DNA of 62,905 bases, filler included, from Octopus bimaculoides (GCF_001194135.2; 4 parts of 4 records of this genome joined end to end with filler, not necessarily neighbours in it); one strand, 5' to 3'; positions 28,201 to 49,545 are shown, counted from the whole stretch's first letter. Numbers and translations: made by a program. Notes: generated by a model from the sequence alone, not told the origin.

Positions 28201-28397
28201 ATTATAAATATCTAAAAAAACTATATAGAAATGTGTATATAATTCGATAATATATATATGTATAGAAATACAGTTATACATAACCACATATAAGTATATA
28301 TAAGAAACATTTTTGAGTAATTTTTCTATACAATATTATTATCATTGTTTACATTATTTATATTTGACGGATATTGGCTCTCATCTTGTTTGTTGTT

Positions 28398-28443
28398 AAC
28401 ACAACGTTTCGGTTGATAAACCCTCCAGCTTTCATCAGTTATC
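28398..28443 (-). ncRNA. Minimal hammerhead motif, decayed inverted copy
   Basis: Core CTGATGA..GAAACGTT intact. Stem I (GATAA) and stem II (AGCTG/CAACC) are mismatched. Confidence 0.6.
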
Positions 28444-28541
28444 TTGGGGAAATTTCGAACCTGGGTTCTCATTCCTAAGTTATTTTTCGATGTTGTTATT
28501 AACACTTTAGGAATGAGAACCCAAGTTCGAAATTTCCGCAA

Positions 28542-28587
28542 GACACCTGATGAAGATTGGAGGGTATATCAGCCGAAACGTTGTGTT
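28542..28587 (+). ncRNA. Minimal type I hammerhead ribozyme motif (Penelope pLTR type)
   Basis: Stem I GACAC, core CTGATGA(A), stem II GATTG..CAGCC (one mismatch), GAAA, palindromic ACGT stem III, site GUU, then GTGTT closing stem I. Confidence 0.75.
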
Positions 28588-29428
28588 AACAACAAACAAG
28601 ACGAGGACAAATATCCGTCAAATGTAAATAATGTAAATAATGTAAATAATGTACATAATTCCTCATCTCTCAACTATAGAACTGTATTAATAATATAACC
28701 ATATNNNNNNNNNNNNNNNNNNNNNNNNNNNNNNNNNNNNNNNNNNNNNNNNNNNNNNNNNNNNNNNNNNNNNNNNNNNNNNNNNNNNNNNNNNNNNNNN
28801 NNNNNNNNNNNNNNNNNNNNNNNNNNNNNNNNNNNNNNNNNNNNNNNNNNNNNNNNNNNNNNNNNNNNNNNNNNNNNNNNNNNNNNNNNNNNNNNNNNNN
28901 NNNNNNNNNNNNNNNNNNNNNNNNNNNNNNNNNNNNNNNNNNNNNNNNNNNNNNNNNNNNNNNNNNNNNNNNNNNNNNNNNNNNNNNNNNNNNNNNNNNN
29001 NNNNNNNNNNNNNNNNNNNNNNNNNNNNNNNNNNNNNNNNNNNNNNNNNNNNNNNNNNNNNNNNNNNNNNNNNNNNNNNNNNNNNNNNNNNNNNNNNNNN
29101 NNNNNNNNNNNNNNNNNNNNNNNNNNNNNNNNNNNNNNNNNNNNNNNNNNNNNNNNNNNNNNNNNNNNNNNNNNNNNNNNNNNNNNNNNNNNNNNNNNNN
29201 NNNNNNNNNNNNNNNNNNNNNNNNNNNNNNNNNNNNNNNNNNNNNNNNNNNNNNNNNNNNNNNNNNNNNNNNNNNNNNNNNNNNNNNNNNNNNNNNNNNN
29301 NNNNNNNNNNNNNNNNNNNNNNNNNNNNNNNNNNNNNNNNNNNNNNNNNNNNNNNNNNNNNNNNNNNNNNNNNNNNNNNNNNNNNNNNNNNNNNNNNNNN
29401 NNNNNNNNNNNNNNNNNNNNNNNNNNNN

Positions 29429-30247: not shown

Positions 30248-30972
30248 ATTTTCACTTCTACACATTTCAAACAACGTTACGACAGTCATATTCACACATT
30301 TAAAACTATCTATAAGAAAATACTATCGAAATTGTTGGGAAAGAATCAGCAGAAAAATTCAGTGTTTTCACTGAGATGGAAAATTGTATTTAGGGTTAAA
30401 TCTATACCTAAAAGTTTAACTTTTTGCGAAAATACTTTCTGTTTAAACATAGGACCTCAATATCCTCACTTCTACAAACCCAGAGTCGAGAACTTTATCC
30501 ACTTTTACTCACGTCGGACACAGTTTGCTGCAGAATCACTTATACGCGTGTCAGTGTATGTGTGTGTGTCTGTCTGTCTATCTGTATGTATGTATGTCTG
30601 TCTGTCTGTCTGTTTGTTTGTGTCATGTTCGCGCGAACAGTTAGTTGGTAATCCATTTTCCTAACAAGCAAGGCAGGAATAATTTTGTATTTTAATTTTT
30701 ATCAAATTAACTAGAATATTTTAGAAATAAGCTTTGTACCGAACTGTCAGTTGTATTTTTTCCAGTTTTCTCACTTTCACCTCTAGTGACCTCCGGTGTA
30801 TATGGAACAGATAGCTATAACCAAAATACAGCATTATAGGAATATAAGATTAATTGCATTAATAAAAAAAGTGAACATTAAAATTTCAATAAAATATTAA
30901 ATAAAAAAGTCAATCAGATGAAGATTATATATTGATTTATGATATATGAAATAGATAGATAGACCATATATG

Positions 30973-31014
<42 letters not shown>

Positions 31015-31173
31015 TTGTTTTGCAAGATTTTTGATGTGAAATCGTGTGTTGAAACAGATGTTGTTGTACTTGGGGATGGTCATATTGCCAGTTTAGCCAA
31101 TAAAAACACACGCACTGTATATTTGGTGTTAATTTGCTTCAGCTTTATATTACATTAATCTTAATCTTATTTC

Positions 31174-31218
31174 GGCCAGAGTTCTTTCGTCACACTTCTG
31201 TGACCTCATCAGTGGTCC
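31174..31218 (-). ncRNA. Minimal type I hammerhead motif, second family
   Basis: GGACCA-CTGATGA-G-GTCAC agaagt GTGAC-GAAA-GAAC-TC-TGGCC. Stem II is perfect, the site is CUC, and stem I has one bulge. Confidence 0.75.
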
Positions 31219-31334
31219 TTTGTTTCCTTCCTTCTTATGTGTGTCTCACCTTGCTAAATATCAGCCATATAATCAGTATACAAAATGGCTGATATTTAGC
31301 AAGGTGAGACACACATAAGAAGGAAGGAAACAAA

Positions 31335-31379
31335 GGACCACTGATGAGGTCACAGAAGTGTAACGAAAGAACTCTGGCC
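31335..31379 (+). ncRNA. Minimal type I hammerhead motif, inverted partner
   Basis: Same as above but stem II reads GTCAC/GTAAC (one mismatch). Confidence 0.7.
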
Positions 31380-32004
31380 AGAATAAGATTAAGATTAATG
31401 TAATATAAAGCTGAAGCAAATTAACACCAAATATACAGTGCGTGTGTTTTTATTGGCTAAACTGGCAATATGACCATCCCCAAGTACAACAATATATATN
31501 NNNNNNNNNNNNNNNNNNNNNNNNNNNNNNNNNNNNNNNNNNNNNNNNNNNNNNNNNNNNNNNNNNNNNNNNNNNNNNNNNNNNNNNNNNNNNNNNNNNN
31601 NNNNNNNNNNNNNNNNNNNNNNNNNNNNNNNNNNNNNNNNNNNNNNNNNNNNNNNNNNNNNNNNNNNNNNNNNNNNNNNNNNNNNNNNNNNNNNNNNNNN
31701 NNNNNNNNNNNNNNNNNNNNNNNNNNNNNNNNNNNNNNNNNNNNNNNNNNNNNNNNNNNNNNNNNNNNNNNNNNNNNNNNNNNNNNNNNNNNNNNNNNNN
31801 NNNNNNNNNNNNNNNNNNNNNNNNNNNNNNNNNNNNNNNNNNNNNNNNNNNNNNNNNNNNNNNNNNNNNNNNNNNNNNNNNNNNNNNNNNNNNNNNNNNN
31901 NNNNNNNNNNNNNNNNNNNNNNNNNNNNNNNNNNNNNNNNNNNNNNNNNNNNNNNNNNNNNNNNNNNNNNNNNNNNNNNNNNNNNNNNNNNNNNNNNNNN
32001 NNNN

Positions 32005-32056
<52 letters not shown>

Positions 32057-32251
32057 TTATAAGAAGGGATGGTATTACGAAATACCATCACATGTGGCAA
32101 GCGAGTTTATCAGCCGTACAGGTAAAATGTATACATACAATACAAGTTATACTCATATATATATATATATACATAAATAGATAGATAGATAGATAGATAG
32201 ATAAATAGGTACATAGATAGATATATAGATATACACGACGGCACTACATAG

Positions 32252-32501
32252 GCACTTGCATCGCTAAAAATAGAAGTCAAAAGTACTTCTGTACCACAGA
32301 ATAGTCACAAATCAGATTGAGGCATGGTAGGAAAAAACTCCAGTGCACAAGCAATACTGGTCAACTTGCTTGTACTGACCTAGAAGAGGTAAGACGTTTT
32401 TAATGTTCACTGGAAGTTTTTTCCTACCATGCCTATATTAGATTTGTAGCTATCCTGTGGTACAGAAGTATTTTTGACTTCTATTTTAGCGATGTACGTG
32501 C
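32252..32501. mobile_element. MITE-like element with ~95 bp inverted arms
   Basis: gcacttgcatcgctaaaaatagaagtcaaaag... pairs with ...tttttgacttctattttagcgatgtacgtgc. Confidence 0.7.
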
Positions 32502-32964
32502 TCATGTGGTGGCTTCGTGTATATATATATATATATATNNNNNNNNNNNNNNNNNNNNNNNNNNNNNNNNNNNNNNNNNNNNNNNNNNNNNNNNNNNNNN
32601 NNNNNNNNNNNNNNNNNNNNNNNNNNNNNNNNNNNNNNNNNNNNNNNNNNNNNNNNNNNNNNNNNNNNNNNNNNNNNNNNNNNNNNNNNNNNNNNNNNNN
32701 NNNNNNNNNNNNNNNNNNNNNNNNNNNNNNNNNNNNNNNNNNNNNNNNNNNNNNNNNNNNNNNNNNNNNNNNNNNNNNNNNNNNNNNNNNNNNNNNNNNN
32801 NNNNNNNNNNNNNNNNNNNNNNNNNNNNNNNNNNNNNNNTATATATATATAAGTCATCTCTACAGGTTGTTCACAAGATATCGCAAGTCCATCTCTCTCA
32901 GAATCGAGAGACCACCACAATATTACTTTCAAATTTTGCCACAAGGCCAGCATTTTTTTTTTTT

Positions 32965-35633: not shown

Positions 35634-35723
35634 CAAAGTGCTTTGTAAGGAATTGGCTGTACTTTGGTCCTTTCCAGGTTTTACAGATGATTGTGATTGT
35701 GGCAATGATGCTGTTCCTGTTGG
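35634..35723 (-). CDS. Ser/Thr/Pro-rich cassette exon, divergent copy (unknown mucin-like gene)
   Basis: catattttgtttgtag|...|GTACAT, 90 nt. Encodes PTGTASLPQSQSSVKPGKDQSTANSLQSTL, 14/30 identical to the 48.1 kb copy, with no indel or stop. Confidence 0.65.
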
Positions 35724-36555
35724 CTACAAACAAAATATGACATTGGTCAAATATATACAAAAATTCCTCTGTGAAAATAGATAATTGCATTAAATTTAAA
35801 TGAAATTGTCAAATGAATATTAAATGGAAATTATATAGCATGCATACGACCCAAATATAAACCACAGAAACACAAATACGCGCACAAACACACATACATA
35901 CATGTACGCGCAAAGAAATACATACACACATAAAAACATGTGGGTGTATAATATAAATATCATTATATATATATATATATATNNNNNNNNNNNNNNNNNN
36001 NNNNNNNNNNNNNNNNNNNNNNNNNNNNNNNNNNNNNNNNNNNNNNNNNNNNNNNNNNNNNNNNNNNNNNNNNNNNNNNNNNNNNNNNNNNNNNNNNNNN
36101 NNNNNNNNNNNNNNNNNNNNNNNNNNNNNNNNNNNNNNNNNNNNNNNNNNNNNNNNNNNNNNNNNNNNNNNNNNNNNNNNNNNNNNNNNNNNNNNNNNNN
36201 NNNNNNNNNNNNNNNNNNNNNNNNNNNNNNNNNNNNNNNNNNNNNNNNNNNNNNNNNNNNNNNNNNNNNNNNNNNNNNNNNNNNNNNNNNNNNNNNNNNN
36301 NNNNNNNNNNNNNNNNNNNNNNNNNNNNNNNNNNNNNNNNNNNNNNNNNNNNNNNNNNNNNNNNNNNNNNNNNNNNNNNNNNNNNNNNNNNNNNNNNNNN
36401 NNNNNNNNNNNNNNNNNNNNNNNNNNNNNNNNNNNNNNNNNNNNNNNNNNNNNNNNNNNNNNNNNNNNNNNNNNNNNNNNNNNNNNNNNNNNNNNNNNNN
36501 NNNNNNNNNNNNNNNNNNNNNNNNNNNNNNNNNNNNNNNNNNNNNNNNNNNNNNN

Positions 36556-36590
<35 letters not shown>

Positions 36591-37336
36591 TGTGTGAGAG
36601 GGTCTGAAAAAATATGTTTTTTTGTTTCAGTTTTGATGTCTGTCTGTTGTAAAATTCAATCCAGCCCACGGCCTACAGATAAGTCCAGAGTGGACTTATA
36701 CAAATTGTCAGGCATATCACTTCAAGACTTTGTCTTGGCTCTCAGTTCTTTAAGAACAAGACATCGCATATTGAGTGTGTGTTTCATATTGTGTGTGTTT
36801 CAAAGTTTCGCCTCGACGGCAATGGATATCGATTTCGAAAAAGATAGACAGGTTCAAAAAAAAAAAAACAATATTCTGTCTGTAGATTCTATAAAATTCG
36901 GAAAATAAATGTCCTTTAATAAACACTGAATATAAAGTTAAACATGTGCAAACATTTTCGGGGTCACCTCGTGTATGTTTGTGTGTGTGTGTGTATGTGT
37001 GTATGTATTTGCATGTGTGTGTGCGTGTTCATGTATGCATATGTGTATATATATGTATATGCATATATACTCTTTTACTCTTTTACTCTTTTACTCGTTT
37101 CAGTCATTTGACTGCGGCCATGCTGGGGCACCACCTTTAAAATATTATCATGTGGAGAATCCGGGCACATTTATATACGTGTGTGCGGATAGATACATAT
37201 ATACGTGCATACGTACATGCATACATAAAAACATACGTACCTGCATTCATATACATGCATACATACATGCATACATACATACATACATACATAGCAAATT
37301 AGTAGATTTCACATGAATATTAAGGGAAATATGTAC

Positions 37337-37366
37337 CGAAGTACTTTGCGAAGAATCTGTTGCAGT
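37337..37366 (-). CDS. Ser/Thr-rich cassette exon, 3' part only (rest in N gap)
   Basis: Encodes ...TATDSSQSTS followed by the same TCG|GTACAT donor. Runs into the gap at 37367. Confidence 0.55.
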
Positions 37367-37996
37367 NNNNNNNNNNNNNNNNNNNNNNNNNNNNNNNNNN
37401 NNNNNNNNNNNNNNNNNNNNNNNNNNNNNNNNNNNNNNNNNNNNNNNNNNNNNNNNNNNNNNNNNNNNNNNNNNNNNNNNNNNNNNNNNNNNNNNNNNNN
37501 NNNNNNNNNNNNNNNNNNNNNNNNNNNNNNNNNNNNNNNNNNNNNNNNNNNNNNNNNNNNNNNNNNNNNNNNNNNNNNNNNNNNNNNNNNNNNNNNNNNN
37601 NNNNNNNNNNNNNNNNNNNNNNNNNNNNNNNNNNNNNNNNNNNNNNNNNNNNNNNNNNNNNNNNNNNNNNNNNNNNNNNNNNNNNNNNNNNNNNNNNNNN
37701 NNNNNNNNNNNNNNNNNNNNNNNNNNNNNNNNNNNNNNNNNNNNNNNNNNNNNNNNNNNNNNNNNNNNNNNNNNNNNNNNNNNNNNNNNNNNNNNNNNNN
37801 NNNNNNNNNNNNNNNNNNNNNNNNNNNNNNNNNNNNNNNNNNNNNNNNNNNNNNNNNNNNNNNNNNNNNNNNNNNNNNNNNNNNNNNNNNNNNNNNNNNN
37901 NNNNNNNNNNNNNNNNNNNNNNNNNNNNNNNNNNNNNNNNNNNNNNNNNNNNNNNNNNNNNNNNNNNNNNNNNNTAGGGTAAAAAAAATCAGATAT

Positions 37997-39118
37997 TAAT
38001 TAATATCGATTTATAACCAGGAAGCCAGCACATTGAAAGAATCAGAGAGATTCAGAAAAAATATCTGAGATCTCAGGGGATCAATGTATATGTGTATATA
38101 ACGACGACCACTAAGTGGACGGTTAATGTGCTAGAAGAAGATCACATGTAATGTGTCTACTAAGACCTAATAGTTCTCAAAAGAAATTCAGTTCTCGAAA
38201 GAAATTTCGCTGAATTTCTTTTGAGAACTATTAGGTCTTAGTAGACACATTACATGTGATCTTCTTCTAGCACATTAACTGTCCACTTAATGGTCGTCGT
38301 TATATATACATATATATATATACAGCTAGAGAGAGAGATAAAAAGAGGAAAGAAAAACGAAGAGCCATGACCGAATCCGATTACAGCTCATTCAACTCTT
38401 CACACTGGGAATTTCTTTAACAGGAAACCATTTAGGAACTAGAATTGGCTGCTATGACAGTATTTATGAAATTGTATAAATACGGGAATCAATGCGTGTG
38501 TTTGTGTTTCTGTGTGTGTGCTGAGAGAGAAATGAGATCGATAGATAAAGAGAGATACATAGACAGATACACAGATTCTAAATAGAAATGGTGACAGAAA
38601 TCCAGACGTCCAAACTGACAGACAGACTGACGGGCGGACAGACGGGCGGACAGACAAACGGATGGACTGGCATGCAAGTAAATAGAGAGGTAAACAGACA
38701 AAACAACAGAGTAAAAAATAAATAGACATGCAAACAGAAGAAAGGTATATAAATATAAAAGAAAGCATTATATAAATGTTATATAGAGATTGTATACATA
38801 AATGATTTGCAGACGATAGGTGAGAGTCATCGCCAAATGATGGTAAGAAAGTATTGATTTCGAAACCATGGTCTACAGATAACCTATTTATTTCTATAAT
38901 TTTCACTAGTCTCGCCCGTTTGTTTTTGCTTCTCTGAATTTTTTCTTTGAAAATTTTTAAGTGATCTTCTTCTAGCACATTAGCAGTCCCCTTAGTGGTC
39001 TCTTTTATATATACATATACAATAATCCTTTTGAGATCTCACAAAAAAAATTTTCTGAATCTTCTGATTCTTTTAATGTGCTGGTTTCCTGCTATTAAAT
39101 TAATATTATTTAATATCA
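37997..39118. repeat. Nested inverted repeats
   Basis: Near-perfect palindrome with arms 38091-38191 and 38210-38310 (spacer 18 bp). A diverged inverted copy of ~37997-38145 lies at ~38960-39118. Confidence 0.85.
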
Positions 39119-40752
39119 AATTGTTTACCCTATTATGTTAATTANNNNNNNNNNNNNNNNNNNNNNNNNNNNNNNNNNNNNNNNNNNNNNNNNNNNNNNN
39201 NNNNNNNNNNNNNNNNNNNNNNNNNNNNNNNNNNNNNNNNNNNNNNNNNNNNNNNNNNNNNNNNNNNNNNNNNNNNNNNNNNNNNNNNNNNNNNNNNNNN
39301 NNNNNNNNNNNNNNNNNNNNNNNNNNNNNNNNNNNNNNNNNNNNNNNNNNNNNNNNNNNNNNNNNNNNNNNNNNNNNNNNNNNNNNNNNNNNNNNNNNNN
39401 NNNNNNNNNNNNNNNNNNNNNNNNNNNNNNNNNNNNNATATTTATATATTTATATATTTGATCCTTTATATTGAACACTCAATATTTCATCTACATTCAA
39501 TACTTTCTTTCATGGTGCCATCCATTTTTATTTTATTTTATTTTATATTATATATTGTATATTATATTATATATTGTATATTCCATATTCTATACCCCAC
39601 ATTGGTTCTGCAGGAATATAAATAAAACATAAAAACAGACAGTGTTGGAACTCTTTTAAACTAAATAATATATTCCTCTATACACAATCATACAAAAAAC
39701 CCCACCTTTTTTGTATTTATTTTTACTCGCATATATACATACATATATATATACAGACAAATGCAGTAAAATGGTATGAATTTTAGGGCCACGCTCAACG
39801 TACTGAATTCACACAGATTTTTATGTTATGTATATGTGTATACATAAAATATACGTATATATGTTTCTATATATATGTGTGTGTGAGTGTGTATGCATAT
39901 ATATGTATATGTGTGGGGGGATGTATGTCTATATATCGAGAAAGAGAGAATGTGGGAACATGAAGACCCAAACCGATATATAAACGCACATACATATGCA
40001 CAACTGCACACACGCATACATATATTCTTTTACTCTTTTACTCTTTTATTTGTTTCAGTCATTTGACTGCGGCCATACTGGAGCGCCGCCTTTAATCGAA
40101 CAAATTGACCCTAGGACTTATTCTTTGTAAGCCTAGTACTTATGCTATCGGTACCTATTTTACCGAACCGCTAAGTTACGGGGTGGTAAACGCACCAACA
40201 TCGGTTGTCAAACGATGGTGGGGGAGACAAACACAGAGACATAAACATATATATTTATGTATGTATATATANNNNNNNNNNNNNNNNNNNNNNNNNNNNN
40301 NNNNNNNNNNNNNNNNNNNNNNNNNNNNNNNNNNNNNNNNNNNNNNNNNNNNNNNNNNNNNNNNNNNNNNNNNNNNNNNNNNNNNNNNNNNNNNNNNNNN
40401 NNNNNNNNNNNNNNNNNNNNNNNNNNNNNNNNNNNNNNNNNNNNNNNNNNNNNNNNNNNNNNNNNNNNNNNNNNNNNNNNNNNNNNNNNNNNNNNNNNNN
40501 NNNNNNNNNNNNNNNNNNNNNNNNNNNNNNNNNNNNNNNNNNNNNNNNNNNNNNNNNNNNNNNNNNNNNNNNNNNNNNNNNNNNNNNNNNNNNNNNNNNN
40601 NNNNNNNNNNNNNNNNNNNNNNNNNNNNNNNNNNNNNNNNNNNNNNNNNNNNNNNNNNNNNNNNNNNNNNNNTATATATATATATATGTACATTTATATA
40701 AATAAATAAATACATATACATATGCATTGTGTGTGTGAGTGTGTGTGTGTGA

Positions 40753-40809
<57 letters not shown>

Positions 40810-40812
<3 letters not shown>

Positions 40813-42576
40813 ATTGTGTGTGTATTGTGTGTGTATAATAATATATATATTAGGTCATCCTATCAGTAATGTCCGAATTTGGGTAAAGAAAGAAAGTGAT
40901 CTAATTTTATCTTTTATTAAAGTTTAATCCTGTTCATAATTACCATGATTATCGATGAATTCCTTCATTGGTGAAAGCCCCTTTTTGGTTTTCATGAAAA
41001 GAAGGAAGAGAGGTAAGTTTCGATCTGTTTGCGTGCTTTTTAGTACTAATACATCTAAATGATTCCGTAAACGTCGAAACAAATGGTAATCAGGAGCGAG
41101 GTCCGAGGAAATAAAGCGAGTGAGGGATTTTTTTCACAGCCAAGTTCTTCAATTTTTTCTGGTGTAATCTTTGTAGTGGAGGGCCTTTCCTTTCTAGTGA
41201 AGGGCTCTGCCTATGTAGCGAAGAGCCCTGTGCGTTTCCCAAATCTGCAGATTGACTAGTGAAAGAGGAATTCATCGATTTGAAGAAATAACATAAGCCT
41301 TTGATGAAATGAAATCAAAATCACCAAAGTGTGGTAAAACTTTTTTAAATGTTCGAAGACGGTATGTCTCCTATCCATAATGGCAGAAGCTGAGCAGGTT
41401 CCCATACCTACGAGCCTATAGCTCTGAAAATGCATGCTAGCAAAAGCATAGATCGCATTATCAGAAGGAGACTGAACACGTTGATAAAACAAAAAATCTT
41501 GTTCACAGACACGCTGCATGGCTATCATCTACGGAAGAGCTGGTTCACACATCTGCAACAGCATTATGACTGAGTAATGAAACAGCTCAACCACTCAAAT
41601 GTAGATGTGATACATCTCGAATTTGCCAATTTGGTTATTGAATATAATTGAAAGTATGAGATAAATTTTATATAGAAATTATATACATAAATGATATACA
41701 GACGATAGGAGAGAGATATCTCAAAATGATATATGAAACACGATGAAACACCACTTTCTTATGAATGGTTAAAGCAGGCCTTCATTTCTCCAAAGCAACA
41801 TCTAAATACTCTAATTGTTGGTAATAGGTGTGAGAGATAATCGTTGCATTAATTGGTAGCAATTTAAAGTCGATGACTCCAATGCAATCCCACCAAACAC
41901 AAAGAAGAACCTTTTTGTCTGGAATTCCTTTTTGGGTTGTGGTTTAGCCTATTCTCTACACGTAACTTATTTCCTGTGTCGCTTAAGATTTTAATTAAAA
42001 AATTCTATTTTTATCACCGGCCACTAATCTGTCCAAAAATATTGAGATACTTTCACGAGAGTGAGGAGATGAGCAGATGTCTATTCGTAATTTTCGGTTG
42101 AGGAACCCATTTTCCGAATTCAGGGGTCTTTCCAAATTCTTGAAGATGGCGGTGAACTGTTGAATGGCTTGAATTGAGCTCGCTTGCCAATTCTTAAACT
42201 GACACAACATTATGCTTCTCAAACTCATCACCAATTTCAACAGGACATCCTATACGAGGTTTCTCTCTTAGGTTAAAATTTCCATTTTTGAATTTTTGCA
42301 AGCCATCTTCTACGACATCTTCCATTGAAGCACTCTTCACCATAAACAGAATGAATATTTTGTGTTCCTTTTATTGCACAGTTTCTTCATTGAACACATA
42401 AAGCATTTTGTGCCTTAAATGCTCCTTCGATATGTTGATCTTTGAAGGGTTAATATTAGTAATTAATTCAGTTGGGTATCAATCGATACCATTTGATTGA
42501 TGCCGTTAAAATACCGCCAAATTGTGAGAGTTATTACATATATGATATTTCGGATATTATTCATGGGGTGACCTGA
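40810..42576 (-). mobile_element. Decayed mariner element split by an insertion
   Basis: TIR-like ends ttaggtcatcctatcagtaatgtccgaa / revcomp tcaggtcaccccatgaataatatccgaa. The N-half (RRWL.KFKNG, GKWVP, FLDRLVAGDK) is at ~41990-42450 and the C-half (EELGCEKIPHSLY..DLAP.DYHLFR) at ~41030-41200. Confidence 0.75.
41250..41620 (+). mobile_element. CR1/L2-like RT fragment
   Basis: YEPIAL...HGY...QHYD.VMKQL...NVDVIHLEFA, a decayed form of NYRPISL...DVIYLDFAKAF. Confidence 0.7.
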
Positions 42577-42774
42577 TGTGTGTATGTATTTGTGTGTGTG
42601 TGCGCGCGGGCGCTGAAAGAGGGGTGGCATCAATAAAGGGGGAACTGTAGCCAGACCAATACACAGAAGGACACTGTAACAGAAACAGACAAACAGGCTG
42701 ACACAAAGACACACAGACAGAGAGGAAGATGCAACATTTTGACTTTTAACAAGTAATTTGAAATAGATATGTAC

Positions 42775-42864
42775 CGAAGTATTTTGCAAGGGATCTCTTG
42801 TGGTTTGGTTCTCTCCAAGTGTAACAGAAGATGACGAAGAAAGCGAAGATGAGGTTCCCATTGG
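42775..42864 (-). CDS. Ser/Thr/Pro-rich cassette exon
   Basis: tttgtttgtag|...TCG|GTACAT, 90 nt. Encodes PMGTSSSLSSSSSVTLGENQTTRDPLQNTS. Confidence 0.7.
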
Positions 42865-43407
42865 CTACAAACAAAATATGACGTGGCACAAACAATTATA
42901 TACAACGAAATGACACATTGCACAAATCAATATACAAGAAAATGCACACGTTAACGAATATAGAGAATGGTATTAAGTATCAATGACATCGTCGTATATA
43001 CATTATATAGAGATTGTATATAGACGCGTGCGTGCGTATGTGTTTATAAACTTCATTGAAAGTATTATATGAATATTATTGAGATTGTATACACATATGA
43101 TAAGCACAGGATAAGTGACAGATACCTGAAAATTATGTACATATCCACATGTGCAGTAAAATTAGGATTTTTAAAACAGTAACTGACGCAGAACGGGCCA
43201 TTGTCATAAAAAAAAGTGGAACTGTAGCCAGACAAATACACAAAAGGACACTCTAACAGAGGCAGAGAGGCAGGCAGACACAGAGACACACAGACACAGA
43301 GGAATATGTAACATTTTGACTTTGACAAGGTGGATATGGTACTTAAATTTAGGCATCAGGTATAAGTATGGTATTACCCAGACAATTCCAAAATAAGGTG
43401 ATTAAAA

Positions 43408-43884
43408 ATCAAAATAAGCAACAAGGATATTCAAGGTTAATGCAGGCCGATCGTTTCATGCGACTCCATTTATTTAAGCAATGCGAGCATTACATTAAAT
43501 TTAAAATGCAGAACTATCTTCAGCTGCAGAAAGATACAGAAAATTTACTGAAATTTCATTTCAGTAGAAGGACATATTATTGTAACTACATTTAAACACT
43601 CCAAGTGGGAAAGAAGAATACGAAAAAACATTTTAAAGTCAAAATACTGGCTAAGTCAAAATGGTTTTTCGTATTCTTCCTTCCCACTTGGAGTGTTTAA
43701 ATGTAGTTATAATAATATGTCCTTCTACTGAAATGAAATTTCAGTAAACTTTCTGTATCATTGTGCAGCTGAAGATAGCTCTGCATTTTACATTTAATGT
43801 AAGGCTCACATTGCTTAATTAAATGGAATAGCCTGAAACGATCGTACTGCATCAACCTTGAATATCCTTCTTGCTTATTTTGAT
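43408..43884. repeat. Foldback (MITE-like) element in array intron
   Basis: Arms ~43408-43631 and ~43661-43884 (atcaaaataagc... / ...gcttattttgat). Confidence 0.9.
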
Positions 43885-43898
43885 ATATACATATATAT

Positions 43899-43932
<34 letters not shown>

Positions 43933-43990
43933 TGACAGACAGACAGACAAACAGGCAGGTAGACACAAAGTCACACAGATACAGAGGATG

Positions 43991-44440
43991 ATGCAACTCC
44001 ATATATTTAAGCAACGTGAGGATTACATTAAATTTAAAATGCAAAACTATCTTCAGCTGCACAAAGATACAGAAATTTTACTGAAATTTCATTTCAGTAG
44101 AAGGGCATATTATTGTAACTACATTTAAACACTCCAAGTGGGAAGTAAGAATACAAAAAAAACATTTTAAATTAGCCAGGTCATACAGCCTAAGTCAAAA
44201 TACTGGTTAAGTGAAAATGGTTGTTCGTATTCTTCCTTCCCACTTGGAGTGTTTAAATGTAGTTATAATAATATGTTCTTCTACTGAAATGAAATTTTAG
44301 TAAACTTTCTGTATCTTTGTGCAGCTAAACATTGCTCTGCATTTTACATTTAATGTAAGGCTCATATTGCTTAAATAAATGGAGTTGCATGAAACGATCG
44401 TACAACATTAACTTTCAATATCCTTGTTGCTTATTTTGAT
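43991..44440. repeat. Foldback element, left arm truncated
   Basis: Starts mid-arm at atgcaactcc. Right arm complete to ttattttgat. Confidence 0.85.
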
Positions 44441-45338
44441 ATATATATAGAGAGACNNNNNNNNNNNNNNNNNNNNNNNNNNNNNNNNNNNNNNNNNNNN
44501 NNNNNNNNNNNNNNNNNNNNNNNNNNNNNNNNNNNNNNNNNNNNNNNNNNNNNNNNNNNNNNNNNNNNNNNNNNNNNNNNNNNNNNNNNNNNNNNNNNNN
44601 NNNNNNNNNNNNNNNNNNNNNNNNNNNNNNNNNNNNNNNNNNNNNNNNNNNNNNNNNNNNNNNNNNNNNNNNNNNNNNNNNNNNNNNNNNNNNNNNNNNN
44701 NNNNNNNNNNNNNNNNNNNNNNNNNNNNNNNNNNNNNNNNNNNNNNNNNNNNNNNNNNNNNNNNNNNNNNNNNNNNNNNNNNNNNNNNNNNNNNNNNNNN
44801 NNNNNNNNNNNNNNNNNNNNNNNNNNNNNNNNNNNNNNNNNNNNNNNNNNNNNNNNNNNNNNNNNNNNNNNNNNNNNNNNNNNNNNNNNNNNNNNNNNNN
44901 NNNNNNNNNNNNNNNNNNNNNNNNNNNNNNNNNNNNNNNNNNNNNNNNNNNNNNNNNNNNNNNNNNNNNNNNNNNNNNNNNNNNNNNNNNNNNNNNNNNN
45001 NNNNNNNNNNNNNNNNNNNNNNNNNNNNNNNNNNNNNNNNNNNNNNNNNNNNNNNNNNNNNNNNNNNNNNNNNNNNNNNNNNNNNNNNNNNNNNNNNNNN
45101 NNNNNNNNNNNNNNNNNNNNNNNNNNNNNNNNNNNNNNNNNNNNNNNNNNNNNNNNNNNNNNNNNNNNNNNNNNNNNNNNNNNNNNNNNNNNNNNNNNNN
45201 NNNNNNNNNNNNNNNNNNNNNNNNNNNNNNNNNNNNNNNNNNNNNNNNNNNNNNNNNNNNNNNNNNNNNNNNNNNNNNNNNNNNNNNNNNNNNNNNNNNN
45301 NNNNNNNNNNNNNNNNNNNNNNNNNNNNNNNNNNNNNN

Positions 45339-45699
45339 ACTGAAATTTCATTTCAGTAGAAGGGCATATTATTGTAACTACATTTAAACACTCCAAGTGG
45401 GAAGTAAGAATACAAAAAAAACATTTTAAATTAGCCAGGTCATACAGCCTAAGTCAAAATACTGGTTAAGTGAAAATGGTTGTTCGTATTCTTCCTTCCC
45501 ACTTGGAGTGTTTAAATGTAGTTATAATAATATGTTCTTCTACTGAAATGAAATTTTAGTAAACTTTCTGTATCTTTGTGCAGCTAAACATTGCTCTGCA
45601 TTTTACATTTAATGTAAGGCTCATATTGCTTAAATAAATGGAGTTGCATGAAACGATCGTACAACATTAACTTTCAATATCCTTGTTGCTTATTTTGAT
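45339..45699. repeat. Foldback element, left arm partly in gap
   Basis: Appears identical to the 44.0-44.4 kb copy where both are sequenced. Confidence 0.85.
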
Positions 45700-45707
45700 A
45701 TATATAT

Positions 45708-45742
<35 letters not shown>

Positions 45743-45825
45743 AGTCAGGTAGACACAAAGTGACACAGGCACAGAGGATGATGCAACATTTTGACTTTAA
45801 CAAATAATGTGAAAAAGATATGTAC

Positions 45826-45915
45826 CGAAGTACTTTGCAAGGGATCTGTTGTGGTTTGGTTCTCTCCAAGTGTAACAGAGGATGACGAAGAAAGCGAAGA
45901 TGAGGGTCCCGGTGG
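45826..45915 (-). CDS. Ser/Thr/Pro-rich cassette exon
   Basis: Same splice signals, 90 nt. Encodes PPGPSSSLSSSSSVTLGENQTTTDPLQSTS. Confidence 0.7.
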
Positions 45916-46030
45916 CTACAAACAAAATATGACGTGGCACAAACAATTATATACGAGGAAATAACACATTGCACAAATCAATATACAAGAAAACGCACAC
46001 GTCAATGAATATAGAGAATGGTATATACAT

Positions 46031-46070
<40 letters not shown>

Positions 46071-46157
46071 ACATTCCAGGTGAATATGGTACTTAAGATT
46101 AGGCACCAGAATTAAGTAAGGTATTATCCAGACAATTCCAAAATAAGGTCATTAAAA

Positions 46158-46658
46158 ATCAAAATAAGGAACAAGGATATTCAAGGTTAATGCAGTACGA
46201 TCGTTTCATGCAACTCCATATATTTAAGCAATGTGAGGGTTACATTAAATTTAAAATGCAGAACTATCTTCAGCTGCACAAAGATACAGAAAGTTTACTG
46301 AAACTTCATTTCAGTAGAATGGCATATTATTGTAACTACATTTAAACACTCCAAGTGGGAAGTAAGAATACAAAAAAAAACATTTTAAATTAGCCAGGTC
46401 ATACAGCCTAAGTCAAAATACTGGTTAATTGAAAATGATTTTTCGTATCCTTCCTTCCCACTTGGAGTGCTTAAATTTAGTTATAATAATATGTCCTTCT
46501 ACTGAAATGAAATTTTAGTAAATTTTCTGTATCTTTGTGCGGCTGAAAATTGCTCTGCATTTTACATTTAATGAAATGCTCACATTGCTTAAATAAATGG
46601 AGTCACATGAAACGATCTTACTGCATTAACCTTGAATATCCTTGTTGCTTATTTTGAT
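46158..46658. repeat. Foldback element in array intron
   Basis: Arms of ~230 bp. The spacer has an inner aattagccag/ctggttaatt pair. Confidence 0.9.
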
Positions 46659-46670
46659 ATATATATATAT

Positions 46671-46711
<41 letters not shown>

Positions 46712-46732
46712 TAGACAGANNNNNNNNNNTAT

Positions 46733-46773
<41 letters not shown>

Positions 46774-46865
46774 TAGACAGACAAACAGGCTGACACAAAG
46801 ACACACATACACAGAGGATGATGCAACATTTTGACTTTAACAAATAATGTGAAATAGATATGTAC

Positions 46866-46955
46866 CGAAGTACTTTGCAAGGGATCTGTTGTGGTTTGGT
46901 TCTCTCCAAGTGTAACAGAGGATGACGAAGAAAGCGAAGATGAGGGTCCCGGTGG
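46866..46955 (-). CDS. Ser/Thr/Pro-rich cassette exon
   Basis: Appears identical to the 45826-45915 copy and lies 1040 bp from it. Same splice signals. Confidence 0.7.
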
Positions 46956-47177
46956 CTACAAACAAAATATGACGTGGCACAAACAATTATATACAACGAA
47001 ATGACACATTGCACAAATCAAAATACAAGAAAACGCACACGTTAAAGAATATAGAGAATGCTGTATACAATATATATATATATAAAATTTAGATTCAAGG
47101 TGAATATGGTCCTTAAGTTTAGGCACCAGAATTAAGTATGGTATTATCCAGAGAATTCCAAAATAAGGTCATTAAAA

Positions 47178-47676
47178 ATCAAAATAAGCAACAATGAAAG
47201 TCAAGGTTAATGCAGTACGATCGTTTCATGCAACTTCATTTATTTAAGCAATGCGAGTATTGCATTAAATGTAAAATGCAGACCCATGTTCAGCTGCACA
47301 AAGATACAGAAAATGTACTGAAATTTCATTTCAGTAGAAGGACATATTATTGTAAGTACATTTAAACACTCCACGTGGGAATGAAGAATACAAAAAACCA
47401 TTTTAACTTAGCCAGGCCATACAAGCTAAGTCAAAGTACTGTCTAAGTGAAAATGGCTTTTTTCGTATTCTTCGTTCCCACTTGGAGTGCTTAAATTTAG
47501 TTACAATAATATGTCCTTCTACTGAAATGAAATTTCCGTAAATTTTCTGTATTTTTCTGCAGCTGAAGATTGCTCTGCATTTTACATTTAATGAAATGCT
47601 CACATTGTTTAAATAAATAGAGTCGCATGAAACGATCGTACTGCATTAATCTTGAATATCCTTGTTGCTGATTTTG

Positions 47677-47678
<2 letters not shown>
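47178..47678. repeat. Foldback element in array intron
   Basis: Same family, more diverged copy. Confidence 0.9.
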
Positions 47679-47750
<72 letters not shown>

Positions 47751-47827
47751 GTAGACACAAAGTCACACAGACACAGAGTATGATGCAACATTTTGACTTT
47801 AACAAGTAATGTGAAATAGATATGTAC

Positions 47828-47842
47828 GGAAGTTCTTTGCAA
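47828..47842 (-). pseudogene. Remnant of cassette exon (acceptor and most of the exon deleted)
   Basis: Only TTGCAAAGAACTTCC|GTACAT survives. Upstream on the minus strand it joins directly to unit intron sequence. Confidence 0.6.
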
Positions 47843-48053
47843 ATATAATAAAACACACGCATTAATGAATATAGAGAAAGGTATTACATATCAATGAAAG
47901 CATCATATATACATTATATACAGATTATGTATACAAAGTATATACAAACGAGACAATATACAGGCGAGACATGCAAAATCCATTGGAGGCAAACCTCCAG
48001 CGGGTAGTTAGGTATGTAGGTGACTTTAACATGTAGGTAAAGTAGGTATGTAC

Positions 48054-48143
48054 CGGAGTACTTCGCAAGGGATCTGTTGTAGTTTGGTTCTCTCCCAGCG
48101 TAACAGATGATGACGATGACTGTGAAGATGAGGGTCCCGTTGG
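48054..48143 (-). CDS. Ser/Thr/Pro-rich cassette exon
   Basis: 90 nt. Encodes PTGPSSSQSSSSSVTLGENQTTTDPLRSTP. Against the 45.8 kb copy there are 11 substitutions, 6 of them synonymous in this frame. Confidence 0.75.
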
Positions 48144-48489
48144 CTACAAACAAAATATGACGTTGCACAAACAAATATATACAAAACACATTGTACAAAC
48201 AAATATATAAAAAGCACATTAACGGATCTAAAGAATGATATTAAGTATTTATGTAATTTCATATATATATTATAAGGAGGCTGTATATAAAAATCATATA
48301 CAAACGATTGGTGAAGACTGAAAATTATAAACATATGCACAACTGCAGAGAAATGGTAATAAGTTTTAATTAGCGTAGGACACAGCCACTTTCAATATGA
48401 CTGATATGTACATAACCTCAGAGCTGAGACTTAATACAATATTTTTTTTAGAAATATCTATATGTCATGTACACATGTATACAAGCCTG

Positions 48490-48890
48490 GTGTGTTCTTC
48501 AACTCCGCAGATCCACTGGTGAAAGAGGCAAAAATCAATTTAAGGAAGAAAGCTAAAACTTTGATGAGATGTAGTCGAACTTACCAAAGTGTGGTAAAAC
48601 TTTCTAGAAGGTTCAATAATGAATGAAACAGAGCAGGTTCCCAAAACTATAGGCCTATATCACTGATCGTGCATGTTAGCGAAATCATGGATCGTATTAT
48701 CACAAGATGCCTGAACATATTGATAGAACAAGAAAAATCTCCCACACAGACACAGAGCATGGCTTCCATTTACGGAGAGCTCTCTCACACATCTACTGAA
48801 GCATTATGACTGGGTAATGGAACAATAGTGCCACCACTCATATGTAGATGTGATGCATCTCGAATTTGCCAGCATCCTCGACAAAGTTAG
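48490..48890 (+). mobile_element. CR1/L2-like RT fragment, paralogous to the 41.3 kb copy
   Basis: NYRPISL...HGFH...HYDWVM...VDVMHLEFASILDKV, with the same downstream flank as the 41.3 kb copy. Confidence 0.7.
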
Positions 48891-49325
48891 TTATTATACT
48901 TAATTGAAAGTATTACACAGATATCATTGGGATTGAATACACAAATGATAAGCAGACAGGCGATAGATGAGAGATATCTCAAAATGATATACATATGCTC
49001 ATGTGCAGTAAAATTATGATATTTAAAACGGTGTGTGGCGTAGAACTTGCCTATATCATCACGAAGAATTCACTGATATATTTACTTCACGTAATCTGAC
49101 TCTGTGTGTGTTTATGTGTGTGTTGTGGTGTGTGTATGTTTGCGTGTGTGTGTGTGTGTGCGTGAGAGAGAGAGAGAGAGATGTAAGATTGCTAAAGAGG
49201 TATGAATTAATACAAGAAAGGGAGTCGTGCAAGAAGACAGCCAGACAAGCCAACGGGTAGACGGACAGACATAGATATACAGAAGACAGACACATCTAAT
49301 GATAAAACGGGAAAGAGAAACAATG

Positions 49326-49408
<83 letters not shown>

Positions 49409-49452
49409 CGTATAATTTTAGTTCAAACAAGAACTTGCTAGCAGATATGTGC

Positions 49453-49545
49453 CGAAGTACTTGCCAGTAAATCTGTTGTGGTTTGGTTCTGTCCAGGTGT
49501 AAGAGAGGATGAGTCTACTGATGACGAAGGTGTGAGTTTTGTTGG
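49453..49545 (-). CDS. Ser/Thr/Pro-rich cassette exon, 93 nt, GC donor
   Basis: ttttggttgtag|...TCG|GCACAT. Encodes PTKLTPSSSVDSSSLTPGQNQTTTDLLASTS. The length change is exactly one codon. Confidence 0.55.

What the first reader, a model, noticed from the sequence alone, without database searches (positions are those of the whole stretch)
35634..49545. Array of tandemly duplicated 90-nt exons encoding a Ser/Thr/Pro-rich glycosylation repeat of an unidentified gene
Seen: minus-strand cassettes at 35634, 37337 (partial), 42775, 45826, 46866, 48054 and 49453 are bounded by a conserved tttgtttgtag acceptor and a G|GTACAT donor, and all complete copies are 90 or 93 nt. In phase 0 they encode PTGPSSSQSSSSSVTLGENQTTTDPLRSTP-like 30-mers, and five of the six complete copies carry an N-Q-T sequon. 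Between the 45.8 and 48.1 kb copies 6 of 11 substitutions are synonymous in this frame (1 of 11 in the hydrophobic frame), and no complete copy has a stop or frameshift. Established: S/T/P-rich repeats form O-glycosylated mucin or proteoglycan stalks, and symmetric exons can be added or skipped without changing frame. Inference: this is a gene whose glycosylated stalk is built one exon per repeat, with length set by exon duplication and possibly by splicing. The ORF track mostly shows these cassettes in the wrong frame, and an annotator could easily call the region satellite.
Basis: partly seen in the sequence, partly recalled or inferred. Interest (0 to 1): 0.85.

Follow-up and report, generated by a model that had tools for sequence, protein, structure and literature searches.

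The report
Spliced mucin-like stalk exons, octopus cadherin

Summary
Minus-strand cassettes lie at 49453/49465-49545, 48054-48143, 46866-46955, 45826-45915, 42775-42864 and 35634-35723. A gap-truncated copy lies at 37337-37366. I add a diverged 75-nt cassette (30740-30814) and a dead remnant (47828-47842).

A profile of the 30-mers against 1.84 billion proteins gave one strong hit (E 1.7e-67): Octopus bimaculoides LOC106871506. RefSeq names it "serine-rich adhesin for platelets", FLO11-like or MID2-like; Pfam finds only a cadherin domain, so I read these as composition-driven.

The order is cadherin exons, then eight or nine cassettes, then a transmembrane helix and an acidic tail. Twelve RefSeq isoforms (585-732 aa) differ only by whole-cassette skipping.

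Corrections:
- dN/dS within the window is inconclusive.
- The gaps persist in the v2 assembly, so copy number is a lower bound.

The closest analogue is vertebrate CDHR5 (mucin-like protocadherin), by architecture only; homology is not shown. Verdict: interpretation supported, already annotated, modest interest.

The parts
49465..49545 (-). Cassette A, 81 nt, PTKLTPSSSVDSSSLTPGQNQTTTDLL. RefSeq uses the GC donor CTG|GCAAGT. Skipped in isoforms X2, X6, X8, X10 and X12.
48054..48143 (-). Cassette B, 90 nt, PTGPSSSQSSSSSVTLGENQTTTDPLRSTP. Acceptor ttttgtttgtag|, donor CCG|gtacat.
47828..47842 (-). Dead cassette remnant. It keeps the last 15 nt of an exon (TTGCAAAGAACTTCC) and the donor gtacat (47822-47827). 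The exon body and acceptor have been deleted (about 142 nt relative to the 42.8 kb unit).
46866..46955 (-). Cassette C, 90 nt, PPGPSSSLSSSSSVTLGENQTTTDPLQSTS.
45826..45915 (-). Cassette D, 90 nt, 100% identical to C, although the two units are only about 85% identical overall.
42775..42864 (-). Cassette E, 90 nt, PMGTSSSLSSSSSVTLGENQTTRDPLQNTS. Present in all 12 RefSeq isoforms.
37337..37366 (-). Cassette X, the 3' 30 nt only (..TATDSSQSTS plus donor gtacat). It is cut by assembly gap 37367-37974 and is not in any RefSeq model.
35634..35723 (-). Cassette F, 90 nt, PTGTASLPQSQSSVKPGKDQSTANSLQSTL. The most diverged 90-nt copy, 66-69% nucleotide identity to the others. Skipped in X4, X5, X11 and X12.
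30740..30814 (-). Cassette G, 75 nt, LSVPYTPEVTRGESEKTGKNTTDSS. A diverged member with the same type of splice sites (ttttggttatag| and TCG|gtacaa). Skipped in X5 and X11.
43403..43889 (.). Intronic foldback (hairpin) element, arms about 232 nt, 91% complementary.
43991..44445 (.). Second foldback element in the E-D intron.
46153..46663 (.). Foldback element in the D-C intron. As RNA it folds at -298 kcal/mol, z = -36.
47173..47683 (.). Foldback element in the intron between cassette C and the dead remnant.
44080..45715 (.). Assembly gap 44457-45338 with flanks 100% identical over 377 nt (44080-44456 = 45339-45715). Probably redundant contig ends. It lies within an intron and touches no cassette.

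Best explanation
The cassettes are coding exons of Octopus bimaculoides LOC106871506, a type I membrane protein of the cadherin superfamily.

**Shown**
- RefSeq models splice cassettes R0 (outside the piece), A, B, C, D, E, F and G one after another. Every cassette is phase 0 at both ends.
- The cassettes lie between the last cadherin-domain exon (...LNKE) and a 42-nt exon that precedes the exon encoding the transmembrane helix (FFGAVGVLLLIIIILIAVILLGYCWW-RKRK) and a 300-residue acidic tail.
- The stalk of the longest isoform is 247 residues, 46% Ser+Thr and 57% Ser+Thr+Pro, with seven N-x-S/T sequons.
- The array grew by tandem duplication of exon-plus-intron units of about 1.0-1.4 kb.
- Cassette sequence drifts quickly, down to 66% nucleotide identity. 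Length in multiples of 3, the open frame, the 40-50 nt upstream of the acceptor and the weak GTACAT donor are all kept.

**Predicted by RefSeq; I saw no reads**
- Whole cassettes A, B, C+D, F, G and F+G are skipped in various combinations. This gives stalks of 100 to 247 residues.

**Inferred**
- The stalk is a disordered, heavily O- and N-glycosylated rod that holds the cadherin domains away from the membrane.
- Exon number and splicing set its length. By general mucin geometry this is roughly 6-7 nm per cassette (my own knowledge, not tested here).
- The weak, conserved donor makes each cassette skippable.
For: **Identity of the gene**
- A profile of the 30-mers searched against 1.84 billion proteins gave a single strong hit, P0001, E 1.7e-67, with six matched stretches.
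- P0001 and P0004 are XP_014773486.1 and .2 of O. bimaculoides.
- tblastn maps the model's repeats at 100% identity onto the exact window cassettes.

**Frame and splice sites**
- Every exon of the gene has a length divisible by 3 and AG/GT boundaries. The one exception is the GC donor of cassette A. The flanking constitutive exons therefore fix frame 0.
- The four length differences among cassettes (93, 90, 81 and 75 nt) are all multiples of 3.

**Protein features**
- The Pfam Cadherin domain scores above the gathering cut-off: 39.5-43.5 bits against 28.8.
- The O. sinensis relative P0026 supplies a signal peptide and cadherin domains upstream, 62 bits.

**Isoforms**
- Decomposing the 21 RefSeq proteins shows only whole-cassette differences.
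- Cassette ends share at most 10 nt, except for the identical C and D. Skip junctions would therefore be distinguishable with ordinary reads.

**Duplication and distribution**
- Tandem-unit structure, with exons C and D identical inside units that are about 85% identical overall.
- Within the 102-kb locus the cassette occurs only in this array.
Against: - No RNA reads, cDNA or protein data could be inspected, so splicing and the isoforms rest on NCBI's automatic models.
- The isoform combinations are partly inferred by the pipeline, and the C/D pair is indistinguishable to short reads.
- dN/dS between cassettes is inconclusive (0.28-1.9).
- No orthologous stalk from another species was found. 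The O. sinensis model P0026 has no stalk: after LNKE it continues into a short, different C-terminal exon. Cross-species conservation of the cassettes is therefore untested.
- Glycosylation is inferred from composition only.
- The O. bimaculoides models lack the signal peptide because they are truncated at the 5' end.
Confidence: 0.88

Rival explanations
1. The cassettes are non-coding. On this view they are the conserved core of a tandem satellite or a transposable-element fragment that happens to be open in frame 0, and the RefSeq models are ab initio over-predictions.
For: - The whole unit of about 1 kb, not just the exon, is tandemly repeated and carries foldback elements.
- dN/dS within the window is inconclusive, and two other frames are also open.
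- One unit has lost its exon.
Against: - The cassettes are in phase with real cadherin exons upstream and with a transmembrane-plus-tail exon downstream.
- All length changes are multiples of 3.
- Between the oldest copies only the exon plus its splice-site flanks, about 150 nt, still align.
- The cassette occurs nowhere else in the 102-kb locus.
- The model uses a GC-AG intron and twelve variants. As far as I know, Gnomon allows these only with transcript support.
Confidence: 0.04
2. The exons are real and constitutively spliced, but the isoform diversity is largely an artefact. On this view spliced short reads were mis-aligned among near-identical cassettes, and the stalk has essentially one length.
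For: - Cassettes C and D are identical, B and E are 84-93% identical to them, and cassette ends share up to 10 nt.
- The first annotation release had an isoform with a single C/D copy, which the second release dropped.
Against: - Apart from C and D, exon ends share at most 10 nt, so reads with longer overhangs are unambiguous.
- Skipping of F and G, which are unlike the other cassettes, is also modelled.
- The conserved weak donor GTACAT and the highly conserved upstream intron flank fit regulated cassette exons.
Confidence: 0.2
3. The stalk is read in another frame, the hydrophobic NGTLIFTVIVIICY frame.
For: Sense frame 2 is open in all six complete copies.
Against: The upstream constitutive exon ends and the downstream exon begins on whole codons. 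Only frame 0 joins cadherin, stalk and transmembrane helix in one open reading frame.
Confidence: 0.01

Closest known systems
CDHR5 (mucin-like protocadherin, mu-protocadherin) of vertebrates
   Same: - Type I cadherin-superfamily protein with cadherin repeats.
- A membrane-proximal mucin-like domain made of tandem repeats of about 31 residues rich in Thr/Ser/Pro, followed by a transmembrane helix and a cytoplasmic tail.
- Splice isoforms with and without the mucin-like repeats, including a partial-repeat isoform (bioRxiv 10.1101/2023.02.22.529570).
- The octopus repeat length (30-31 aa) and its position are the same.
   Different: - No specific sequence relationship was shown. The best solved-structure matches of the O. 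sinensis relative's ectodomain are CELSR1, PCDH10, protocadherins and CDH23, with CDHR2 at about 1e-8. CDHR5 is not in the list of 60 shown.
- The octopus gene has at least 8-9 repeats against 2-4.
- Each octopus repeat is a separate exon, skipped individually in the models. In CDHR5 the two main isoforms differ by the whole mucin-like domain.
- The repeat sequences are unrelated.
- Convergent architecture is the more cautious reading.
Titin PEVK region
   Same: Many short tandemly duplicated exons. Each encodes one module of a disordered low-complexity segment. The array expands and contracts by exon duplication and loss, and differential splicing of more or fewer modules tunes the length of the segment (PMC6469411).
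   Different: An intracellular muscle spring rich in Pro/Glu/Val/Lys, with no glycosylation and about 100 exons. There is no homology.
CD44 variant exons and CD45 (PTPRC) exons A/B/C (from my own knowledge, not tested here)
   Same: Combinatorially spliced, frame-preserving cassette exons that encode Ser/Thr-rich, O-glycosylated extracellular segments of type I membrane proteins. In CD44 they sit in the membrane-proximal stem.
   Different: The variant exons are not tandem duplicates of one another. The adhesive domains are different (Link module, or fibronectin III with a phosphatase).
Classical mucins (MUC family) and the proteins named in the RefSeq titles (SraP, FLO11, MTL1, MID2)
   Same: Pro/Thr/Ser-rich tandem repeats with a presumed dense glycan coat.
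   Different: - Mucin tandem repeats are typically encoded in one large exon (my knowledge). Here there is one exon per repeat.
- Pfam finds no family other than Cadherin above its curated cut-off, so no SEA or VWD domain. No LPXTG motif is evident in the sequences.
- I read the RefSeq names as driven by composition, and they should not be taken as function.

Membership tests
Cadherin superfamily (type I membrane cadherin-related protein) | At least one extracellular cadherin (EC) domain recognised by Pfam PF00028 above the gathering score | tested here: met
   39.5-43.5 bits against a cut-off of 28.8 for the O. bimaculoides isoforms. 62 bits with two stretches for the O. sinensis relative P0026. 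LDFE and DIDD..GPAF motifs are visible in the sequence.
Cadherin superfamily (type I membrane cadherin-related protein) | Signal peptide, and a single transmembrane helix followed by a cytoplasmic tail | tested here: inconclusive
   The transmembrane helix FFGAVGVLLLIIIILIAVILLGYCWW followed by RKRK is read directly from the models. A signal-peptide-like N-terminus is seen only in O. sinensis P0026. The O. bimaculoides models are truncated at the 5' end, and the upstream DNA is mostly gap. No predictor was run.
CDHR5 / mucin-like protocadherin | Membrane-proximal tandem repeats of about 31 aa rich in Thr/Ser/Pro, between the last EC domain and the transmembrane helix | tested here: met
   Eight annotated cassettes of 25-31 aa, 57% S+T+P, lying directly between ...LNKE and the transmembrane exon.
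CDHR5 / mucin-like protocadherin | Splice isoforms that include or omit the mucin-like repeats | tested here: inconclusive
   Twelve RefSeq-predicted isoforms differ by whole cassettes. No transcript reads were available to me.
CDHR5 / mucin-like protocadherin | Specific sequence similarity (orthology) of the EC domains or tail to CDHR5 | tested here: inconclusive
   Searching P0026 against PDB sequences lists CELSR1, PCDH10, clustered protocadherins, CDH23 and CDHR2, but no CDHR5 among the 60 shown. I did not confirm that a CDHR5 chain is in the library, and no reciprocal search against vertebrate proteomes was possible.
Classical mucins | PTS tandem repeats in one large central exon, plus SEA, VWD or cysteine-knot domains | tested here: not met
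   There is one repeat per exon of 75-93 nt. Pfam finds only Cadherin above its cut-off.
Satellite or transposable-element repeat | Copies dispersed outside one gene, with no frame or phase constraint | tested here: not met
   In the 102-kb locus the cassette core occurs only in the array. All copies and all length variants keep phase 0. The only strong protein hit in 1.84 billion proteins is this gene. Genome-wide dispersal could not be tested.

The most novel reading that the evidence does not exclude
The hairpin elements of about 500 nt in the introns around cassettes C and D may act as splicing selectors. This is the stretch from the E-D intron to the intron between C and the dead remnant below B.

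Their 240-nt arms are as complementary between introns (87-92%) as within one element. Pairing across introns could therefore loop out cassettes C and D together, and these two are always co-included or co-skipped in the current RefSeq isoforms. The same duplexes would be long dsRNA substrates for cephalopod ADAR editing.

If so, transposon-derived RNA pairing would set the stalk length of a cadherin combinatorially. That would be comparable to Dscam-type competing RNA structures or to Alu-driven exon looping, here applied to a mucin-like spacer.
Probability: 0.07. Interest if true: 0.6.

Novelty: already known. Interest (0 to 1): 0.22.

Why it matters
The result shows that the first-stage reader can recover real, correctly phased micro-exon arrays from raw sequence.

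In biological terms it gives a sensible description to a gene that public databases label misleadingly as "serine-rich adhesin for platelets", "FLO11-like" or "MID2-like". It is a cadherin-related adhesion protein whose distance from the membrane appears tunable in 30-residue steps.

The layout parallels vertebrate CDHR5, and no sequence relationship was found. The parallel suggests that a mucin-like spacer of adjustable length under cadherin domains is a recurrent solution. Tissue-resolved long-read data in octopus could test this.

Beyond that it is an ordinary annotated gene.

Tried and rejected
1. **Word-indexed protein search** with the concatenated frame-0 peptide: nothing at E <= 0.01. 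The likely cause is the low-complexity query. The exhaustive profile search succeeded.
2. **Exact look-up of ten bacterial-style ORFs** from the window: none is in the collection.
3. **Rfam scan of the piece:** no family.
4. **dN/dS in all six frames** between cassettes: no frame is consistently favoured. There are too few and non-independent substitutions.
5. **Gap-free copy number.** The chromosome-scale assembly GCA_001194135.2 carries the same gaps, so this could not be done.
6. **Orthologous stalks.** The searches returned only O. bimaculoides isoforms and two other proteins:
   - an O. sinensis model with no stalk, which after LNKE continues into a short, different C-terminal exon;
   - a genomic Logan contig of another cephalopod's tail exon.

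   No cross-species test of the cassettes was therefore possible.
7. **Look-ups of isoforms X2 and X5 by exact sequence** failed, because only the longest product of a gene is on record. X1 worked.
8. **Literature searches** for the locus name, and for octopus with cadherin and mucin-like, found nothing.
9. **Weak profile hits P0002 and P0003** are unrelated short repeat proteins.
10. **The hydrophobic-frame reading and the satellite reading** were rejected on the phase of the flanking exons.


Full report
**1. The observation**

- There are six complete copies: 49453-49545, 48054-48143, 46866-46955, 45826-45915, 42775-42864 and 35634-35723.
- One copy is cut by a gap at 37337-37366.
- Each follows TTTTG(T/G)TTGTAG and precedes GTACAT. 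The 49.5 kb copy has GCACAT instead.
- Five copies are 90 nt and one is 93 nt.
- Frame 0 is open in all six, and five of the six carry N-Q-T.

A nucleotide profile of the core finds the copies at E 1e-39 to 1e-50. It also finds a truncated remnant at 47810-47842. The copies are therefore homologous, not chance matches.

**2. Gaps**

- No complete cassette touches a gap.
- The 37367-37974 gap truncates one cassette.
- The 10-N gap at 46720-46729 lies inside an intronic (AGAC)n run.
- The 44457-45338 gap has flanks that are 100% identical over 377 nt. This looks like redundant contig ends, so the gap length, and perhaps the gap itself, is unreliable.

All of these gaps are also present in the chromosome-scale assembly. 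Continuity across them cannot be verified, and copy number is a lower bound.

**3. Anatomy of the array**

Self-comparison shows that whole exon-plus-intron units of about 1.0-1.4 kb are tandem duplicates.
- The D and C units are 85.5% identical over 1,176 nt, while their exons are identical (90/90). Their immediate flanks are 94-98% identical.
- Between the oldest copies (F against the rest) only about 150 nt still align. This stretch is the exon plus about 40 nt upstream and about 20 nt downstream.
- The 50 nt upstream of the acceptor are as conserved as the exon, or more so.
- One unit has lost its exon body and acceptor.

dN/dS between cassettes is uninformative. Another pair gives 1 synonymous to 5 non-synonymous, and other frames score similarly.

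**4. Identification**

The word-indexed search with the concatenated peptide found nothing. A 30-column profile of the cassettes, run exhaustively against 1.84 billion proteins, gave one strong hit: P0001, E 1.7e-67, six stretches.
- P0001 is Octopus bimaculoides XP_014773486.1, "serine-rich adhesin for platelets-like isoform X6". Version .2 is annotated on a 36-Mb chromosome.
- The protein contains the window's cassettes, residue for residue, spliced in series.
- Further look-ups recovered isoforms X1-X12 of LOC106871506, 585-732 aa.
- They also recovered the locus L001, which is GCA_001194135.2 CM046624.1:25,563,110-25,664,911. The gene spans 82 kb.
- The window piece equals L001 56016-77812 reversed.

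**5. Gene structure**

tblastn and direct reading of L001 give this exon order:
- cadherin-domain exons, the last ending ...LNKE|gtaggt;
- cassette R0 (93 nt, outside the piece);
- B, C, D, E and F (90 nt each);
- H (42 nt, outside the piece);
- a 936-nt last exon that encodes the transmembrane helix and an acidic tail.

Every exon length is divisible by 3 and every boundary falls between codons. Only frame 0 links the cadherin domain, the stalk and the transmembrane helix. This, not dN/dS, settles the frame.

The length differences among cassettes (93, 90, 81 and 75 nt) are all multiples of 3. The cassettes share a weak donor (GTACAT or GTACAA), whereas the constitutive cadherin exons have gtaaga, gtaagt or gtaggt.

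**6. The protein**

- Pfam finds a Cadherin domain above threshold and no other family above its curated cut-off.
- The O. sinensis relative P0026 adds a signal-peptide-like N-terminus and more cadherin sequence. The O. bimaculoides models are therefore truncated at the 5' end.
- The X1 stalk is 247 aa: 28% Ser, 18% Thr, 11% Pro, with seven N-x-S/T sequons.
- The RefSeq names (SraP, FLO11, MTL1, MID2) have no domain support, and I read them as artefacts of composition.

**7. Isoforms**

Decomposing the 21 RefSeq proteins into cassettes shows that they differ only by whole cassettes.
- A, B, C+D, F, G and F+G are skipped in various combinations.
- R0, E and H are always present.
- Stalk length ranges from 100 to 247 residues.
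- Apart from the identical C and D, cassette ends share at most 10 nt. The skip junctions should be distinguishable in RNA-seq.

I could not inspect the reads, so alternative splicing stands as predicted, not shown.

**8. Mechanism**

Shown:
- one repeat per symmetric phase-0 exon;
- growth by tandem unit duplication;
- preservation of length class, frame and splice signals while the peptide sequence drifts.

Inferred:
- the stalk is a glycosylated, extended spacer between the membrane and the cadherin domains;
- its length is set by exon number and by cassette skipping, which the weak donors make easy.

**9. Comparison with known systems**

The closest known architecture is vertebrate CDHR5, the mucin-like protocadherin. 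It has EC repeats, a membrane-proximal domain of 31-aa Thr/Ser/Pro-rich tandem repeats, a transmembrane helix and a tail. Its splice isoforms carry or lack the repeats.

The octopus ectodomain shows only generic cadherin similarity: CELSR1, PCDH10, CDH23 and CDHR2. Membership of the CDHR5 family is not established, and I treat the resemblance as architectural.

Titin PEVK is the closest precedent for one-module-per-exon arrays whose length is tuned by duplication and splicing. CD44 variant exons and CD45 exons A-C are further analogues, cited from my own knowledge.

**10. Verdict**

But the gene, its exons, the frame and the cassette-skipping isoforms are already in RefSeq, and the principle is well known. 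No paper on this locus was found. Interest is low to modest.

The only unusual lead is the set of hairpin elements of about 500 nt in the neighbouring introns. Their arms pair as well between introns as within one element. Whether they influence skipping or editing is speculation.

Noticed in passing
window 43403-43889, 43991-44445, 45339-45704, 46153-46663, 47173-47683: Foldback (hairpin) elements of about 500 nt sit in the introns around cassettes C and D. Their arms are about 240 nt and 87-92% complementary, both within an element and between elements in different introns. One of them folds as RNA at -298 kcal/mol (z = -36). They are probably a MITE-like repeat that was duplicated together with the unit. 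Any effect on splicing or A-to-I editing is untested.
   Followed up: partly
window 28335-28650, 31058-31495, 32217-32536, 38084-38317: Further near-perfect palindromes lie in the other introns, 79-95% self-complementary over 240-440 nt. Their sequences are unrelated to the elements above.
   Followed up: no
window 44080-44456 and 45339-45715: The two flanks of assembly gap 44457-45338 are 100% identical over 377 nt. This is most likely redundant contig ends, that is, an assembly artefact. The same gap persists in GCA_001194135.2.
   Followed up: partly
window 47822-47842: A dead cassette. Only the last 15 nt of an exon and its GTACAT donor remain. The exon body and acceptor have been deleted, about 142 nt relative to the 42.8 kb unit.
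   Followed up: yes
L001 35710-35793 (outside the window piece): A short alternative terminal exon (SQFFQYKVLAAR*) lies in the long intron after the last cadherin exon. It is conserved in the O. sinensis model P0026 and used in UniProt A0A0L8HD78 (P0020). It suggests a secreted isoform that lacks the stalk and the transmembrane helix.
   Followed up: partly
L001 1-10000 and the N-terminus of the isoforms: The O. bimaculoides RefSeq models start inside a cadherin domain (MSFPQVLDGV...). They lack the roughly 166 N-terminal residues, including the signal peptide, that are seen in O. sinensis P0026. The upstream 10 kb is mostly assembly gap.
   Followed up: partly
L002/L003 (Logan SRR11869390 and SRR11869384) and the last exon of L001: A genomic contig from another cephalopod encodes the transmembrane-plus-tail exon at 57% identity. 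The segment ...LSQNNEI(A/G)YAPLLDDSQRDSWG... is conserved, as is the C-terminal -(A/I)RL. This could be a PDZ-type ligand; that is speculation.
   Followed up: no
window 28079-49875 overall: The piece is very dense in microsatellites, including (AGAC)n, (ATAG)n, (TG)n, (AT)n and (AG)n; TRF gave 98 rows. The (AGAC)n/(AGAT)n run just downstream of each cassette donor is itself part of the duplicated unit.
   Followed up: no
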